Assembly: GCA_048013815.1 (NCBI GenBank)
Contig: CM106586.1
Location: forward strand, 16,368,001-16,432,000
Source of the DNA: Setoptus koraiensis
Lineage: Eukaryota; Animalia; Arthropoda
Direction of reading: 5' to 3'
DNA: 64,000 bases
Shown here piece by piece: positions 34,530 through 43,500 of this stretch. Every line of letters starts with the position of its first letter. Position 1 is the stretch's first letter. A program made the translations under genes and the position numbers. A model generated the notes under the pieces. The model worked only from the letters and a program-made list of their open reading frames with translations, ran no database searches and was not told where the DNA came from.

Positions 34530-37500
34530 CTAATCTTCGTCCGTCTCTGGAGGACCATAAAGATAAGCTAGTTTTTGAAATCTTGGTCCCCATCTGTTGA
34601 GATAGTCAAAGTTTTGATCTTGCTCGCCTTCGCCAATTGATGCTAATGAGCTTAATGATCCGGCAGTGCTACCGCAACCCTCGTAAGCGTAATTTCTGAG
34701 ATCATCCGAGGGCTGAGATGTTGGATCAAGGTCATCATCGGCATTTATCGCTCTGACTTTAGGATCCATGAGATCAGCTGTTGGGTGGTATTCTTGGGGG
34801 TATCTTGGTCGCATGTCTTTAAGGATACCTGGTTTATTGAATAGTACTTGTTTGCCGCCAGTGGATATTGGCGTTCCGCTGGCATCGACGGGAATTCTTA
34901 GTGGAGTTATGTCATAGGCATGCATGTCGTCTTCTCCTCCACCCTCATCGTCATAGCTAATAATATTCTCGCGAACATCATCGTCGGCGTCGCTTGGCCC
35001 AAACTTTTGATCCAAACGATTACTCCTAGATAAAGTGAATAAAGCTACGAACAGGACTAAATTTTTAAGGGAAAAAGTTTTTGAATTGATTAGTGGTTGT
35101 TGAATAGTGATATAAAAAAGAACTCAATGGTACACACATAGCAACTATAGTACCATCGAGAATTTTAAAACAAGTTTAAAATGAATTGATTTGTTATTAA
35201 TATCTTACGGCTTATTAGTATGCAAATGAGAATCGCCATAATAGCGTTGCCACTTAACGTCAAATTATTTGGCAAAGAACTAAGTATTACTTGAACATCA
35301 CATGTGCAATTGGAACATATTCTATTTTCGGGGGAGGGACAATCACAATAAAAGCCGCCACCATAATCAATATTATGGCAAACACCACCATTACCGCATG
35401 ATTTATCGGTACATTCGTTGTGATCGATACATAGAGGTGCAATATACTCCGGGGCTCTTTTGAGTCCAGGCGGACATCTGGTGATTAGGAGATTTAGGGT
35501 AGTGTGAAATCATAATGTTCAGAAACATGCGTGATTATGCAATATTTGTTAGAGAATAAAATAAATTTGTGAGTAATAAGTAAACGAGGTTAAAAACATA
35601 ATTTTGTGCAAACTTATCAATAACCGATAATACTGGGCTGGGAGTTTAAAGTTTTGAGGTCAGTTAAAGCCAGGGAAGATTTAGTTTTGAAAGAAAGTAC
35701 AGTAAAGATGCAAAGAGAGAACCGCAAATGTCTACTTACTTATAACATTCACTAGAATAACTGCTATGATACCTTGAGCCATCGAACCCATAGAGAGACT
35801 CTTTTCTTGTCTAAGCGCATTACACAAATCTCCAACATATTCCACTGGACACTCACAGTAGAATCCTCGACCATCTTCGAGATTTAAGCATTGCCCCCCA
35901 TTACTGCAGGGATCATTCAGACATTCGTTATCATCTGTACAATTACCATCATCTGTCGGTATCCAACCAGTAGGACACCTTTAGTATAGTACAAATGTTA
36001 TTATAGTAGTGTATGCGAGTAGAGGTGAAATCATGAACAGATAGCGAAAGATATTTAGATGAAGGTAGAGAATGAGAGGGAGAGAGAGAGGATAGTTGTA
36101 GCGAGATAGAAAATAGAAAGATGAACACAGCAGACCCAGCCCGGCAATATTATAAAAGTCATACTTACAGGCACTCAAATTGATTCCAAGTATCAACACA
36201 CACCAACGGTGAAGGACAAGCTGAGCTTTTTGGGTTACAGGAATTGAGTGGATGACAACCGTCTTCTAGATTTCTATATTCAGTGACAGCCGCATTTTCC
36301 GAGCCATTCTCAAGAGGAAGATGCCTTTGGTCTATCCTTATGTCGGATATACAACCTGAATAGCGAGAAAAACCAAGAACTTATCAGTGAAATTCTTCAT
36401 CGTCTGATCTTCTTGTAACGTTCAGTAAACTCGGCAATACTTACTTTCATGAAGTCCATTCTCAACATAATAGGTAGTTGGTCCAATGTAAGAAATATCA
36501 CCTCCTACCGATATACCTTGCTTGTTAACAATAAACAACTGATGGTAGCCTTCGAATTGTGTTGTTTCGTTGTATCTCTTTCCACCACCTCCGTCTAGCA
36601 TTAAGGACGCAGTGCTTCCGAATCTACTTGCTCTGACGGTATGCCACTGACCATCACTGACAATGATATCTTGTAGAGTGAGCTCAATGTCATTGTTAGT
36701 CCTTGTTCGACTATCTAGCTGCATCCTAAAACGAATGCGCCTATCTTTGATTTCGATAATTAAATGTTGATGAGTGCTCTTGCCGGGTATTCTAATCAAC
36801 TCTCCAAGCTTCTGACGTGTTCTAAAGTTCATCTGAATATCAGTTTTGTAAACGTTGGGATCGAATGATAAAGCATAACGCATGTAGCTATTCGATTGAA
36901 ACATCTTAACTGGTGCAGGAGTATCACATCTGGCGCCAGTGTAACCAGGTTTGCATAAGCATGAAGCTGATCGATAATTCGCCTCACACTGACCGTGCTC
37001 GCATTGTTTTGCTACAGCGTCTGCTTGACAACGCTCTAGAGATATTTGGCAAGGTGCTGTGCTCTCGAGAGATCCTCCGGCGGATCCGAGGTCGTACATC
37101 TTAGAGTTATGGATGAGATTTCTGATGCACCCTTTAAAGTGTTCTCGAGTGTGACGATCAACTCGTTTCCAACTGGGAAATGAATCTGCGATACTATCAT
37201 TGTGATATATTCCACCGAGCTGCAACGGCGCATTCAGATTTAAGAATTGATTGTATGGTTCGATTTGAGCTGTTCCTTCGCAATTAGAACGATCCATCCT
37301 GAAGGTGTCATCAGGACTGAAAGAAGCGGTTTCACAATGATCAATGACCATACGGGCTTCCTCTCTAGACCAAAATATGTCAATATGATGCCATTCTCCA
37401 TCATTGATCTCTCGCGCAGCCTCTATATATATTTGAGATGTTCCTGAGCCAAAATCTATTATGAGTTTTGGTTTACCTTGAAACAGTTCTAGAGATATAA

Positions 37501-40500
37501 AATCTTCGACTATCTGAGTGCCCATTAGAGGAGCTGCTATGGGACCGTTATAAAGTATCAAACCATTTGGAGTCTCTGTCATGAATTCCACACTTAAATG
37601 AGAATCTTCACATTGTTCTAGGGGAGGAAACCAGGCCCAACTGCCATCACCAGAGAACGTTCTAGATGTGACTTGACATTGAGGTCCATCAAAACCATCG
37701 GGACATAAACAGGTTGCGATTCGACCTTGCATCACACATCGTCCACCGTTTTGACATATCGAGGGGTAAGCTCTACATCCGATATCTGGATCAACCTCGT
37801 CATAGCTTTTGGCCTTACATCCACACTCAGCCACAATTTTTGAATGAACTCCGACAAAAGATGTTCGGTTAGCATTAACCACATAAGGGTATGGTGCTAT
37901 TTTCAATGTGTTGTAGCAACTTCCATCACACTTGTCATTAGCTTCTATTAGGCATTCGTCTATGTTGACCATGGTGATATTGATTCCTAACTCTTGGGAA
38001 ATTGCGTGAATATTGAGACCTACGTAACCATCTAAGAATGTTGATTTATGGTATGGTGAACCATGTGCTGCGAACCTGACATCCGTTTCCGGTCCAACAC
38101 CCTTCCGGTAAGTTGTCATTACACTAAATATGTCAATATTATCCGTTGACTCTTTCAGAATCTTAGAAAGGGTCTCTCGCAGTTGGTCATACTTGCTTTG
38201 GACTTGTCGTTGAGATTTCCAGTCCCAGACTCTGATAAAATCTTCATCAGTGATACCTGATATTCTGATAGATCCGGAATTATGCACTGCCTCTTCGGGA
38301 AGATTTCGTACGATTACAGTCACATTTGCGGGTACGTCAAGGGTGTGCATCTTGTCTACTACATGAAATCGTAATAAAAATACACCCTCAGTGACATTCT
38401 TCATGATGATGGTACCATTGTTATGCGATAAATCAAAGTTAGGATGTCCTGTATTCTGCCATCGAAACGATTTGTCTGGTAGATCCCAATCGTCAGCGTC
38501 CTCGACATGAACACGACCGATCGGAATATTCCTGTAGTTGGCTCCTTGATAGTTATAGACAAATATAGTTTTACTTCCGGGGTGCATTTTGTTATCGTTG
38601 ATATCTCCGATGACAACTGTAAGAGTGCTAGTTCCCGTCAGCGCACCAGGATCCCGACCAAAATCTTTGACGACGATAGGTATATGATACTCTTTTTGAA
38701 CCTCACGGTCGAAACTCACTTTAGATATTACTGTAGCTGTTCCTTCGGCACCATGACTATTATCATGGTATACTTCAAAGCTAGATTTGATTATATCTGG
38801 TGCAGTTGGATCTAATGAGTAGTGAAAGGGTGGCCCGTTACCAGCTGCTCTATCGTCAGGATCAGTGGCCAGTATACCTTCTAAACGCTGACCGGGTGGT
38901 GAATGTTCCTTGATGACCATCCTATCATCTTTCGATAGTCGAGGTGCATTATCATTGATGTCAGTAACAATGACTGTGAGCGAGGCAGTTGCTGTTTTAG
39001 ATGGAACACCATCATCTATTGCGAATACTTTCACATTGTGTCTACTAAAGGTCTCACGATCAAGCATCCTTTGGATCTTTACGTATCCTCGAAGTTGGTC
39101 GATGGAGAAATGTTTCTCCCTGTCTGACGAGCGATCAATTGCATATCTTACTTTAGATAGTCCTACTTGGTCGGGATCTCTGGCTGTAAAATTTGCCAAC
39201 AATGTCCCTGGTGGGGCGGATTCAGGTACGGATACTTCTATGGCGGGTTGATCAAATACCGGCTTATTGTCATTGATATCTCTCAATTTGACTCGTACTC
39301 TGGCTTGATCGATATGGTTGTTATCTCCAGGTTCACCACCGTGATCATTCACTTCGATTGTCAAGTTGAAACCATACCGCTGATTCGGATCTTCGAAATC
39401 GAGGGGCTTGGCAACCTTTAAAGAACCAGTTCCATCAGTATTAGTAACCATCGTGAATTTATCATGACCACTATCTTTATCGAGAATCCTGTAGGTGAAC
39501 CTGTTAGTCTCCAGAAGATCTCCATCGTTAACGGTGACAACAAGAATAGGTAGTGTTGGCAAATCATCTCCGTCGGTTTCGTCAACCTCCACGCTGAATT
39601 CTTTCTTTGCAAAACTTGGTGGCATGTCATTGATATCCCTGACCTTGATTATAGCTTGCACACTTCCAGCTTGATTCCCTCCATCAGTCGCCGTCACCTT
39701 GATGGAATACTCTGGGTTTGTTTCTCGATCTAGACAACATACAGCCGTTTGTATAACACCAGTATCCTCATCAATCTTAAATATAAGCTCATTATTTTCA
39801 TTAACTTGATTTTGTTCAATAGCATATCTTAGTTTGGCATTTGTGCCTTCATTCGGATCATCGTAATCTATCGCTGACATAGTCATTACTGTTTGGCCTG
39901 CAGTTGCATTCTCAGTGACATTGCCATAATATACGGCGTTCTGAAAAAAAGGTGTATTGTCGTTGATATCCTTGAGGTTGACTAGAACATCCGCATAACC
40001 AACCAAGCCATTTTTACCACCCTCATCCTCAGCATATACCGTGAATCTCCATTGAGGCCTGCCTTGAGGTGCGTCCCTATCTAAAGGCTTCTCTACATAT
40101 ATCTCTCCTGTGGATGAGTTGATAGAGAAGTATTTAGATCCTTTATCTTTCTCTGGCCCTGATTTTGAGTCCTGGTCAGTTCCGAGAAAATAGACAATAT
40201 TCTGTTCCCTATCTCTATCGCCATCAGTGGCAACAACCTAATGAATAAAGGTGATGAAAGTGTTAAGAATATCAGTATCGCCGGTTCTATGCTTGCTTAT
40301 AAATCTAGTATTTGGCATCTGGACTATTTAAAAGGTATCTGACCAAATAAATGTAAGTAAAACTTAAATATTTCGATCAATTAAAATGTATTTTTACCTT
40401 AAGAATTAAGAGGGGTGTTCGGTTTTGTTCTTGAATAGAAGTTACGTATGTCTGTTTCTCAAACTTAGGAGGCAAGTCGTTGACATCTTTGATGCTTATT

Positions 40501-43500
40501 TTGACTTGTGTGCTATTTTCATGCAATCCATCTGACGCAACTAAAGTTAAATAAAACTAATTGAGGCATGTAACGGAGGGGGTTTAATGGATTTGAAATA
40601 AAGGAGGATAATTATAATAAAATATATTAGGTTTTTCATGTCATTCACGCAAGGCGTTTGAAGACAGCTTTCGAAGATCGAGTATTAGTTGAGAATATGA
40701 GTTGAACAGTTCAGAATGAGAGTTAAAATTTAAAGCAAAGTGGTTATAACTAAAGTGGTGTATTGACCGAAACTGAAACATAGCGAGTAAACAAATTGTG
40801 AAAAGGAGGGTCAGATAACCTTTCTATAGCCAATATATCAATATTGACCTGCAGTATCTTTTTGGGTAGATTCTTTTCGTCCCCCTCAACAATAGTAGTT
40901 TGATAGATTGGTCTATCAAAAGTTGGTGGATTGTCGTTGACATCTTTATATTATCAAAGCAAGGAAGATCGATTGAATTATCACTATATTGAATGATTCA
41001 TAGAATTGCTAGCATGATAGAATAGGTTGAGAGTTGTTACCTTTAACTCTTATGACAACTGTTGTGAAGTTTTCATTCAAGTTGTCAGAAGCGACTAGCA
41101 CTAGTTTGTACTAGCATTGAAATAGATAATAGTTGGGTTATATGAGTCGAGTTAGATGAGTTGAGTTAGATGAGTTAAGAATTGATTAGATTAGTTAGGT
41201 TAGAACTTTTCAGCTTGTGAAAGGTGGAATTTATGTTACCTCTTTGCGTAGTTCATAATCGAGTGGTCCCGCAACATAGATGGCTCCTGTTTCATTGTTG
41301 ACTGCAAATGCACCACCACCAATATTACCTTTGGTAATTTCATAGCGCAACTTAGAAGATTCATCTTTGTCTTTAGCCGTTACAGTTATCACAGTATGGT
41401 TTATATCTTCGTCTTCATTTACTTCGGCCTCATATAAAGAACGATCGAAATAAGGAGCGTTGTCATTCTTGTCACCAATACCAATCCTAATGTAGTGGGT
41501 CACTGTAACAAATTAGAAAAGTAATTGAGATTAATGATACACATCAACTAGAAAAAATCCACTCGGAGGAAAAAGTCTGAATAAAGTATCCAGGTACCTG
41601 AGTTGGGAGCCTTGTTTCTTCCTGGATTTATATCGGATGGGGCACCGTCAGTCGCAACAACAGGAATGTTGTATGACTGCCGTTCTTCACGATCGAATTC
41701 TGTTTTTGTGAAGAGCTCGCCTGTTTTTCTATCAACGTCGAAATATTTTGTAGCGTCAAATGCTTCAGGACCTACTTTTCCACGAGGCTTTTCCCAGGGA
41801 GAAATACTGTCTTGTTTTGGTTGTTCCAACTCGTAATAAACGCGATTGTTAGGCGAAGTCCCATCACCATCTATAGCTCGTAATGTTGTAACTTTGGTGC
41901 CAGCAGGCATACCCTCCAGAACTGTTTGTTGTTCTTGCTCGGTAAACCAAGGAATTTCATCATTGACATCAATTATCATAATATGAACGGTACACTCGGA
42001 AGCAAGTTGATGTACTCCATCATTCTCAACACGGACGGTCAAGTTATATGAGGTGACAGATTCATAATCTAAATGCTTGGAAGTTTTGATATCCGCCCAG
42101 AATACAGATCCTTCTTTCCTTGGACTCAAATAGAATGTGCCTTTTTTATTTGTAATTTCTGTTCCACCTTTGAGCAATGTATAATACACAGTTGGGTTGT
42201 CCGGTATACCTGAATGAGCTTTGATGGATATGATAGTATTTCCAATGTTTTCATTTTCTTTCACTCTGACTTCATAGAACGATTGATCCCAACTGGGAGG
42301 GTTCGTACCCATGTCTATAACGCTGATTTTAATAGACACCTGGGCCTTGTTAGGCTGCAAACCTCTGTCCATAGCAATAGCTTCCAGATAATAAGTTTTT
42401 TCAATTAATGCTCTCTTCAGTGTGATCCAACCTGAGTCAGGATTGATTGAAAATGTAGACATTGCAGAGCCTCTACCTTGTAAACTGTAAGTGATAGCAC
42501 CATTGGTGTCCGCGTCTTCATCCGAGGCAGAAACGCGAAGTAATTGAGCACCTACTGGTGTGTCTTGATCAACATTTTCTTGGTACTCCTGTCGATCAAA
42601 TAAAGGTGGATTGTCGTTCGCATCTAGGATTTCAACTTTGAATGAGCACACTCCCTCCATAGGTGGAGTACCACGGTCAACCGCTTTGACTGTTATACTG
42701 ACAAACCTACCATCGTCACCCTCACGATCAAAGACTTTGTTAGATCTGACTTCGCCGGTCAACTCGTCGATAGTGAACTTTGTTCCTTTTTGATTTGGTT
42801 GTTGCACTATAGAATATCTGACCATACCATTATGGCCTTTATCTTGATCGTTTGCTTTGACAGTTATGACACTGGTTCCACTCGCTGCTCCTTCGTAGAT
42901 CTGTGGATTATATTTTTCACAATCCTCAAAAATAGGCTTGTTATCGTTGACGTCTGTGATAAAAACTACAACTAATGCGGAGCTCGTATGAATGATGTTG
43001 TTTCCTTTTTCACAACATTTTCCGTCATCTTTTGCTGTAACATTCAGTTCATACTTGTCTCTGTCTAACTGTATTTGTGCGTTGCTTGATAACCTTATCA
43101 CACCAGTACGCTCATCTATCTGAAACATGGGATGTCTGGGTCCAGGCGCAAATCCGAAGATGATGTTGTCACCGTCTTTGTCACTGGCAACGACTGTTGT
43201 CACAAGTGTTTTAGGCCCAGCATTCTCATCGACGTTAGGTGTATATACATCTTGGCTGAACTTGGGAGCTTCGTCGTTGGTATTTTCCGTGTATATTCTT
43301 ACAGTTGCAGTGCCATTCAACGAGGGAGTACCTTTGTCTCTGGCCCTGACGGTAAGAATGTATGTGTTGTTGACGTCGGCATCTAAACGGCGATTTGTAT
43401 TAATATTGCCGTTTTTGTCTATAATAAATTCGCTTCGATCTATTTCATATTCTATTTCCGCATTTTTACCACTGTCTGCGTCGGTGGCTGATATGTGATA

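What the first reader, a model, noticed from the sequence alone, without database searches (positions are those of the whole stretch)
40330..40824. Long-range intronic RNA pairing that would loop out CadN alternative exon 1B (docking-site/selector-type switch)
In transcript sense, GAAAGGUUAUCUGACC (40824-40809) lies ~25 nt downstream of the weak GTCAAT donor of cassette A. It is complementary to GGUCAGAUACCUUUU (40344-40330) in the intron after exon B, giving 15 pairs with one bulged U and a terminal G-U. The duplex brackets exon B exactly and would bring cassette A's donor next to the downstream acceptor. This geometry matches the downstream docking-site pairing known for insect mutually exclusive exons such as 14-3-3zeta exon 5. 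I do not know of such an element described for a chelicerate N-cadherin. The complementarity is seen; the function is inferred.
Basis: partly seen in the sequence, partly recalled or inferred. Interest (0 to 1): 0.8.

Follow-up and report, generated by a model that had tools for sequence, protein, structure and literature searches.

The report
Conserved RNA bridge choosing N-cadherin exons
Two short intron stretches on either side of one alternative N-cadherin exon can base-pair, and the same long-range pairing recurs at the same place with unrelated sequences in eleven related arthropod genomes, so it is very probably a real RNA switch for choosing between two mutually exclusive exons.

Summary
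On the minus strand, 40824-40809 pairs with 40344-40330. The helix extends to about 21 bp (40832-40808 with 40345-40321, -26 kcal/mol). It encloses exon B (40556-40398) of a neural-cadherin gene.

It is not chance. No dinucleotide shuffle of the two introns reached it (0/500). Both arms are 92-100% identical in a close relative whose surrounding introns are only 56-65% identical.

In eleven species with the same exon layout, the strongest duplex between the two introns always lies in the same place. One arm starts 17-33 nt after the weak donor of cassette A; the other ends 47-83 nt before the downstream acceptor. The arm sequences cannot be aligned between lineages (combined p about 3e-14).

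I also found a second, upstream pairing (intron 1 with intron 2) that would loop out cassette A (combined p about 2e-8; the control intron pair gives p = 0.30). The layout matches the tested bidirectional pairing model of Drosophila serpent exon 4. It does not match a strict multi-selector docking site.

RNA contigs confirm the exon B to downstream-exon junction. Use of cassette A and the effect on splicing remain inferred. This is a new member of a known kind; I found no report of such a structure for N-cadherin. Earlier scan notes cover only this window.

The parts
41240..41502 (-). Upstream constitutive exon (ends ...CGCAAAGAG|GTAACA)
   Evidence: Translation is 90-99% identical to relatives. 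An RNA contig joint removes the intron 41597-41503 just upstream of it.
41111..41239 (-). Intron 1 (129 nt, GT..AG)
   Evidence: same position in all relatives.
41210..41226 (-). Intron-1 arm of the upstream stem (intron 1 nt 14-30); pairs with 40834-40817
   Evidence: Energy -13.5 to -14.0 kcal/mol; 14/200 shuffles reach it. The stem is kept in L001 despite 10 substitutions in 28 nt, with a C-G to U-A compensatory change; a random-substitution null gives 1.9%.
41041..41110 (-). Exon A1 (70 nt), first half of cassette A (a-type, ME-13a-like)
   Evidence: 96% nucleotide identity to L001.
40944..41040 (-). Intron A (97 nt), splitting cassette A; absent in L005, L012 and L013
40849..40943 (-). 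Exon A2 (95 nt), second half of cassette A, encoding DVNDNPPTF...
40843..40848 (-). Weak donor of A2 (GTCAAT). Position +3 departs from the A of the gene's other donors in all 14 loci read: a pyrimidine in 13, G in L004 (GTGCCT).
   Evidence: The B donors are GTAA(A/T)T, GTACGA or GTATGA.
40829..40848 (-). Predicted local hairpin over the A2 donor (intron 2 nt 1-20)
   Evidence: Present in the MFE and centroid fold. Similar hairpins occur in L001, L004, L006 and L014 but not in all species.
40557..40848 (-). Intron 2 (292 nt), between A2 and B
40808..40832 (-).
   Evidence: Identity to L001 is 92% (core 100%) against 56% for the rest of intron 2.
40817..40834 (-). Intron-2 partner of the upstream stem (intron 2 nt 15-32); overlaps arm 1 by 16 nt, so the two stems exclude each other in this species
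40398..40556 (-). Exon B (159 nt, 53 aa; b-type, ME-13b-like, encoding DVNDLPPKF...)
   Evidence: An RNA contig joins 40398 directly to 40237.
40238..40397 (-). Intron 3 (160 nt), between B and the downstream exon
   Evidence: Removed exactly in an RNA contig of run X4.
40321..40345 (-).
   Evidence: Identity to L001 is 92% (core 100%) against 65% for intron 3 nt 78-140.
40100..40237 (-). Start of the downstream constitutive exon (VVATDGDRD...), which runs on into the ORF 40006-36422

Best explanation
The gene is an arthropod neural cadherin (CadN). It carries a pair of homologous alternative cassettes at the position of the insect ME-13a/13b exons: A (split into A1+A2, 55 aa) and B (53 aa). 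A long-range RNA helix forms between a site 17-41 nt after the weak A2 donor and a site in the middle of the intron after exon B. Formation of the helix puts exon B, with both its splice sites, into a 464-nt loop. It also shortens the effective A2-to-downstream-exon intron from 611 nt to about 100 nt, a normal intron size for this genome. This favours splicing of A2 to the downstream exon and skipping of B. A second helix, between intron 1 and intron 2, does the converse: it loops out cassette A and favours B. In this species the two helices share 16 nt of intron 2, so only one can form per transcript, which gives an either/or choice. Shown here: the helices, their statistical excess, their positional conservation with sequence turnover, the compatible and compensatory substitutions, the weak A2 donor, and the B-to-downstream junction in RNA. 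Inferred: that the helices form in vivo and set the A/B ratio, and the direction of the effect. The direction is taken from the mutational analysis of Drosophila srp exon 4.
For: The exon layout gives in-frame A, B, A+B and skipped forms, so neither frame nor NMD enforces exclusivity. The helix reaches -26.1 kcal/mol with 0/500 shuffles as strong and is in the MFE and centroid fold. In 8/8 species folded globally, the intron 2:intron 3 helix is in the MFE with mean pair probability 0.65-0.93. In eleven species (WIN, L001, L002, L004, L005, L006, L011, L014, L015, L016, L017) the top duplex is always at intron 2 nt 17-53 and intron 3 nt 43-115. Shuffle counts are 0, 0, 0, 3, 19, 0, 2, 1 of 500 and 0, 0, 0 of 300. 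The Fisher combined p is 3e-14, and the chance of the shared position alone is about 7e-7. The introns cannot be aligned between these species, so the arms differ in sequence. WIN and L001 are 92-100% identical in the arms against 56-65% elsewhere, and the changes are G.U to A-U and a helix extension. The upstream stem is significant in most species (0/200 in L002 and L004, 2/200 in L011; 0/300 in L016, 2/300 in L015; combined p 2e-8), while the control pair intron 1 x intron 3 gives p = 0.30. There is a compensatory C-G to U-A change in WIN/L001. The A2 donor is weak in every species. The effective intron becomes 66-99 nt. The exon B to downstream junction is present in RNA contigs. Precedent: srp stem II (selector after exon 4.1 with a docking site before exon 5) is required for inclusion of the weak-site exon 4.1, shown by disruptive and compensatory mutants (PMC4691838).
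Against: There is no experimental or in vivo structural evidence. No RNA contig covers cassette A, so A usage and mutual exclusivity are not shown in this species. The upstream stem in this window is weak on its own (-13.5 kcal/mol, 14/200 shuffles). More distant relatives with long introns (L012, in a spider-like clade; L009) show no significant pairing, so the structure may be limited to compact-intron lineages, or the test lacks power there. Nucleotide-level covariation can be read for only one species pair, because the other introns cannot be aligned.
Confidence: 0.7

Rival explanations
1. The helix is a selected RNA structure, but its role is not choice between A and B. Possible roles are general intron bridging for splicing efficiency, suppression of A+B double inclusion only, a substrate for a double-strand RNA-binding protein or editing enzyme, or timing of co-transcriptional splicing.
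For: Conservation of the structure proves selection, not which function is selected. Only the B junction is seen in RNA.
Against: The arms sit exactly where the tested srp stem II elements sit: just after the distal exon's weak donor and before the downstream acceptor (PMC4691838). The converse stem around cassette A exists as well. A generic role would not predict stems bracketing each alternative cassette together with a consistently weak A2 donor.
Confidence: 0.2
2. The complementarity is chance between two AT-rich introns.
For: An exact 8-bp match between introns of 292 and 160 nt is expected about 0.7 times by chance (own arithmetic).
Against: 0/500 shuffles reach the full duplex. The arms are conserved islands in L001. 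The same position is occupied by unrelated strong duplexes in ten further species. The control intron pair shows no excess.
Confidence: 0.02
3. The two arms are conserved because each binds a protein (a splicing enhancer or silencer), or they are remnants of a transposon's terminal inverted repeats, and the complementarity is incidental.
For: Both arms are conserved blocks between WIN and L001.
Against: Protein-binding motifs would keep their sequence. Here the sequence is replaced in each lineage while the complementarity is kept. The arm is not repeated elsewhere in the window. The enclosed exon B is ancient and shared across arthropods, which does not fit a mobile element.
Confidence: 0.03

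Closest known systems
Bidirectional (dual) RNA pairing in Drosophila serpent (srp) exon 4.1/4.2 (Yue et al. 2016, RNA 22:96; PMC4691838)
   Same: Both are two-exon mutually exclusive clusters. There are four intronic elements: one after the upstream constitutive exon, two between the variable exons, and one before the downstream constitutive exon. The downstream stem brackets the second variable exon and serves the first one, whose splice site is weak. The upstream stem brackets the first variable exon. In several mite species the two stems cross like a pseudoknot.
   Different: The gene and the phylum branch differ (chelicerate-like CadN against a Drosophila GATA factor). The first cassette is itself split by an intron. 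In this window, L001 and L005 (and by 5 nt in L014) the two stems overlap in intron 2, which gives direct competition for one site, whereas the srp elements are separate. No mutational test has been done here.
Downstream docking-site/selector systems (Dscam1 exon 4 and 9 clusters, 14-3-3zeta, Mhc, MRP), as summarised in PMC6071210
   Same: The intron after the last variable exon holds a site that pairs with a site just downstream of a variable exon. This loops out the intervening variant and brings the chosen donor to the constitutive acceptor.
   Different: Those clusters have several selectors competing for one docking site. Here only one partner of the downstream arm exists.
Human/mouse ATE1 exons 7a/7b (PMC7797038)
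   Same: A central intronic element between two mutually exclusive exons can pair with either of two partners. This resembles the intron-2 hub in this window, which pairs with intron 1 or intron 3.
   Different: In ATE1 the competing arms overlap the 3' splice sites and act by masking them, and a further 30-kb stem is involved. Here the arms lie near 5' splice sites and act by looping.
Arthropod N-cadherin mutually exclusive exons ME-13a/13b (Hsu et al. 2009, PMC2655722)
   Same: The position in the protein, the length (54-55 aa) and the DxNDNxPxF motif are the same. Mite A groups with the DVNDNPP type and mite B with the DVNDLPP type seen across arthropods. That paper inferred conserved cis-regulatory elements around ME-13 from low synonymous rates.
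   Different: The paper covers insects and Daphnia only, proposes no RNA structure and names no element. Here the a-type cassette is split by an extra intron in most species.

Membership tests
srp-type bidirectional RNA pairing for mutually exclusive exons | A tandem pair of homologous alternative exons between two constitutive exons | tested here: met
   A (A1+A2) and B are homologous, both are in frame, and both are conserved in all relatives.
srp-type bidirectional RNA pairing for mutually exclusive exons | A downstream stem between the intron after variable exon 1 and the intron before the downstream constitutive exon | tested here: met
   Present in 11/11 short-intron species at the same position; Fisher p 3e-14.
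srp-type bidirectional RNA pairing for mutually exclusive exons | An upstream stem between the intron after the upstream constitutive exon and the intron before variable exon 2 | tested here: met
   Best intron 1 x intron 2 duplexes: 0/200 (L002, L004), 0/300 (L016), 2/200 (L011), 2/300 (L015), 7/200 (L005), 10/200 (L014), 14/200 (WIN), 30/300 (L017). Combined p 2e-8, control pair p 0.30. A compensatory change occurs in WIN/L001. The stem is weak in this window taken alone.
srp-type bidirectional RNA pairing for mutually exclusive exons | A weak splice site on the exon served by the downstream stem | tested here: met
   A2 donors are GUCAAU, GUCAUU, GUGCCU, GUUAUU, GUCAGA, GUUGUU and similar. 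B donors are GUAA(A/U)U or similar.
srp-type bidirectional RNA pairing for mutually exclusive exons | Disruptive mutations change exon choice and compensatory mutations restore it | not testable with these tools
   Needs a minigene or genome editing.
srp-type bidirectional RNA pairing for mutually exclusive exons | Transcripts contain exactly one of the two exons | tested here: inconclusive
   Only the B-to-downstream junction is seen (X4 contig). No contig covers A, and no run is on record as RNA.
Docking-site/selector competition (Dscam exon 4/9, 14-3-3zeta type) | A docking site in the intron downstream of the cluster | tested here: met
   Arm 2 is at intron 3 nt 53-77.
Docking-site/selector competition (Dscam exon 4/9, 14-3-3zeta type) | Two or more selector sequences, one per variable exon, competing for the same docking site | tested here: not met
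   No second partner for arm 2 was found in the rest of intron 3 or intron 2 in any of 11 species beyond shuffle expectation.
Arthropod CadN ME-13a/13b exon pair | 54-55 aa alternative exons carrying DxNDNxPxF, lying before the last five cadherin repeats | tested here: met
   A is 55 aa (DVNDNPPTF) and B is 53 aa (DVNDLPPKF). Five further D(I/V)ND motifs follow in the downstream ORF. The lengths and motif are as in PMC2655722. Both types are seen across arthropod proteins.
Rfam families | Match to a curated covariance model | tested here: not met
   No match at E<=1 in 40000-41600.

The most novel reading that the evidence does not exclude
In this lineage a single 27-nt hub just after the weak A2 donor toggles between an upstream partner (intron 1) and a downstream partner (intron 3). 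This would form a bistable RNA switch that decides between the 13a-like and 13b-like N-cadherin isoforms (neuronal and mesodermal in flies). The switch would work by collapsing a 440-611-nt span to the 66-99-nt intron length that the intron-definition splicing of compact genomes prefers. The architecture would have persisted across deeply diverged mite lineages (63% protein identity) through complete turnover of the paired sequences. That would make CadN ME-13 a natural system for studying how long-range RNA switches evolve.
Probability: 0.4. Interest if true: 0.7.

Novelty: new member of a known kind. Interest (0 to 1): 0.6.

Why it matters
How arthropod N-cadherin chooses between its conserved alternative exons has been open since they were described. 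Hsu et al. 2009 inferred cis-elements around ME-13 but named none. The list of fly genes with reported competing structures (Dscam, MRP, Mhc, srp, 14-3-3zeta; PMC6071210) does not include CadN.

The present data give a concrete, testable element with exact coordinates. They extend the srp-type bidirectional model to another gene and, apparently, to chelicerate-like arthropods. They also supply eleven natural sequence variants of one structure. Finally, they suggest a simple physical rationale: the helix shortens the effective intron to the length typical of the genome.

Tried and rejected
- **Unrestricted RNAduplex.** On whole introns it gives a long global pseudo-duplex and is useless as a statistic. 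I replaced it with a seeded 26-nt local scan, applied identically to real and shuffled sequences.
- **First shuffle script.** It hung.
- **Metagenome scan for more loci.** It returned only 4 loci, of which one duplicated L003, one lacked the upstream region and two were distant. Most loci therefore came from the look-up of encoding contigs, now exhausted (12/12).
- **Cross-species intron alignment.** MAFFT on the L002-type species gave no credible alignment. Nucleotide covariation could be read only for WIN/L001, and I did not build a structure-fitted alignment because it would be circular.
- **Distant relatives.** L012 (spider-like), L009 and L013 have long introns and no significant duplex. 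Exon B of L013 looks disrupted.
- **Second selector.** A search for another partner competing for arm 2 found none.
- **Rfam.** No match.
- **Sequencing runs.** None is on record as RNA. Three low-coverage runs turned out to hold spliced contigs but do not cover cassette A.
- **ESM Atlas.** It gave only 'Arthropoda' for taxonomy, so the label 'mite' is not tested here. The best named relatives are spider CadN at 59%, then Strigamia 55%, Limulus 54% and insects at 53% or less.
- **Whole-stretch fold z-score.** It is unremarkable (-0.14), as expected when one helix matters in 611 nt.
- **Other exclusivity mechanisms.** Steric hindrance (intron 2 is 140-292 nt), U12/U2 incompatibility (all introns are GT-AG and the A2 donor is not U12-like) and frame/NMD (all forms are in frame) were rejected.
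Full report
**What is at the locus**

The minus strand of 36.4-44.3 kb encodes a neural cadherin (CadN). The large downstream ORF finds arthropod neural cadherins, with spiders as the best named relatives at 59% identity. Reading the minus strand and translating candidate joins gives this map:

| Feature | Window coordinates | Size |
|---|---|---|
| Upstream exon | ...41240 | |
| Intron 1 | 41239-41111 | 129 nt |
| Exon A1 | 41110-41041 | 70 nt |
| Intron A | 41040-40944 | 97 nt |
| Exon A2 | 40943-40849 | 95 nt |
| Intron 2 | 40848-40557 | 292 nt |
| Exon B | 40556-40398 | 159 nt |
| Intron 3 | 40397-40238 | 160 nt |
| Downstream exon | 40237... | |

A1+A2 (55 aa...DVNDNPPTF...) and B (53 aa...DVNDLPPKF...) are homologous alternatives. 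The A, B, A+B and skipped forms are all in frame, so neither frame nor NMD can enforce exclusivity. Intron 2 is also far too long for steric exclusion.

Length, motif and position match the ME-13a/13b pair of insect and Daphnia N-cadherin (PMC2655722). Across arthropod proteins the same two exon types recur. Hymenopteran models carry only the DVNDNPP type, in line with that paper's statement that Apis kept only a 13a-like exon. On that basis, mite A is 13a-like and B is 13b-like. This assignment is an inference.

**The observation**

The repeat finder reports them as the top inverted repeat, 464 nt apart. The motif occurs nowhere else in the window.

RNAduplex extends the helix to 6+6+9 bp: intron 2 nt 17-41 (40832-40808) with intron 3 nt 53-77 (40345-40321), at -26.1 kcal/mol. 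With a seeded local-duplex statistic, 500 dinucleotide shuffles of both introns gave a mean of -13.1 (sd 2.2). None reached the observed value. The helix is in the MFE and the centroid fold of the whole 611-nt stretch.

**Comparative evidence for the downstream stem**

A close relative, L001 (95% protein identity), has the same exons. Its intron 2 is 56% identical outside the first 41 nt, and intron 3 nt 78-140 is 65% identical. The differences inside the extended helix are structure-compatible: G.U becomes A-U, and an AA to GU change adds a pair. The energy goes from -26.1 to -29.5 kcal/mol.

Nine further species share the exon layout. They are 62-64% identical to the window's protein and 76-88% identical to each other. 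In every one, the strongest local duplex between intron 2 and intron 3 has one arm at nt 17-53 of intron 2 and the other at nt 43-115 of intron 3. Energies range from -18.4 to -30.1 kcal/mol by the sliding-window scan and the seeded scan; L005 scores -13.4 in the seeded scan used for the shuffles. Examples are a perfect 12-bp run in L002 (the core of a longer helix) and a perfect 15-bp helix in L015.

Shuffle counts for the downstream stem:

| Species | Shuffles as strong |
|---|---|
| WIN | 0/500 |
| L001 | 0/500 |
| L002 | 0/500 |
| L004 | 3/500 |
| L005 | 19/500 |
| L006 | 0/500 |
| L011 | 2/500 |
| L014 | 1/500 |
| L015 | 0/300 |
| L016 | 0/300 |
| L017 | 0/300 |

The Fisher combined p is about 3e-14 over ten independent species. 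The chance that the top duplex falls in this positional window is about 7e-7 over the seven independent species with shuffle positions. The introns cannot be aligned between these species, so the structure is kept while the sequence is replaced. Global folding puts the helix in the MFE in 8/8 species tested, with mean pair probability 0.65-0.93.

**A second stem**

The same scan between intron 1 and intron 2 finds an upstream pairing. The control pair, intron 1 with intron 3, behaves as null.

| Species | Upstream stem energy (kcal/mol) | Shuffles as strong |
|---|---|---|
| L002 | -24.9 | 0/200 |
| L004 | -25.2 | 0/200 |
| L016 | -21.5 | 0/300 |
| L015 | -18.6 | 2/300 |
| L011 | -15.6 | 2/200 |
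| L005 | -14.7 | 7/200 |
| L014 | -13.1 | 10/200 |
| WIN | -13.5 | 14/200 |
| L017 | -15.7 | 30/300 |

The combined p is 2e-8 for the upstream stem and 0.30 for the control.

In the window this stem joins 41226-41210 to 40834-40817, which overlaps arm 1 by 16 nt. Between WIN and L001 the intron-1 arm region has 10 substitutions in 28 nt, yet the stem energy is unchanged (-14.0 against -13.9). The chimera of the WIN intron-1 arm with the L001 intron-2 arm drops to -9.3. Only 1.9% of random substitution sets keep the stem. One change is a true compensatory C-G to U-A.

**Splice sites and geometry**

The A2 donor is non-consensus in every species (GUCAAU, GUCAUU, GUGCCU, GUUAUU, GUCAGA, GUUGUU). 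The B donors are GUAA(A/U)U-like.

The downstream helix reduces the effective A2-to-downstream-exon intron from 440-611 nt to 66-99 nt. That is slightly shorter than intron 1 of the same gene in these species (89-191 nt) and close to the 95-97-nt introns of this window.

**RNA evidence**

No run is on record as RNA. However, three low-coverage runs of a near-identical organism hold spliced contigs. One joins 40398 to 40237, removing intron 3 exactly. Another removes 41597-41503. Exon B and its borders are therefore real. Cassette A is not covered, so its use is supported only by strong purifying selection: 1 amino-acid change in 55 against L001, with most nucleotide changes synonymous.

**Mechanism**

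The best-supported reading is the bidirectional pairing model established by mutagenesis for Drosophila srp exon 4 (PMC4691838). There, a stem between the intron after exon 4.1 and the intron before exon 5 is required for inclusion of the weak-site exon 4.1, and an upstream stem directs exon 4.2.

In L002, L011, L015, L016 and L017 they are separate and cross like a pseudoknot, and in L004 they abut (2-nt overlap), as in srp.

A strict docking-site/selector competition is not met, because arm 2 has no second partner.

**Limits**

- Nothing here shows the helices form in vivo or change splicing.
- Relatives with long introns (L012, in a spider-like clade; L009) show no significant pairing.
- The taxon label 'mite' was not tested.
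- The literature searches found no paper linking CadN exon choice to RNA pairing. They cover open-access text only.

**Verdict**

It is a new member of a known kind and of moderate to high interest.

Noticed in passing
window 40829-40848 (minus strand): The weak A2 donor GTCAAT is predicted to sit in an 8-9-bp local hairpin (intron 2 nt 1-20), in both the MFE and the centroid fold. Comparable donor-covering hairpins are predicted in L001, L004, L006 and L014 but not in all species. The hairpin could add a masking layer to the switch.
   Followed up: partly
window 40944-41040; L005:2455-2619; L012:1110-1274: Cassette A is split by an extra intron (A1/A2) in the window and most relatives. It is a single exon in L005, L012 and L013, so there has been lineage-specific intron gain or loss inside an alternative cassette.
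   Followed up: partly
proteins P0056, P0062, P0048, P0054: Several public arthropod CadN gene models carry the a-type exon end (..VLQ/VLR) directly followed by a b-type exon. Both mutually exclusive exons seem to have been annotated in tandem.
   Followed up: no
proteins P0015, P0036, P0069 and the mite loci: Both ME-13 exon types (DVNDNPP and DVNDLPP) occur in chelicerate-like sequences: spider models use the b type and an Ixodes model the a type. The duplication therefore seems older than the insect-Daphnia split documented in 2009.
   Followed up: partly
window 41503-41597: An RNA contig (run X6) removes a 95-nt GT-AG intron between the 918-aa ORF exon and the next exon. This fixes the exon start at 41502.
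   Followed up: yes
L013:1780-2060: In this more distant relative the exon B region keeps the C-terminal ...RLPKRILK, but the upstream part is in another frame with a stop. This may be a decayed or mis-assembled b-type exon.
   Followed up: no
window 35209-36152: Earlier scan notes on this window report a second mutually exclusive pair in the same gene, with a pairing of opposite geometry. From its position I take it to be ME-18-like, but I did not examine it. The same multi-species local-duplex test could be applied to it.
   Followed up: no
window 40717: The only difference in a 2.8-kb DNA contig of run X2 (labelled as a different organism) is T>C in intron 2, outside both arms.
   Followed up: no
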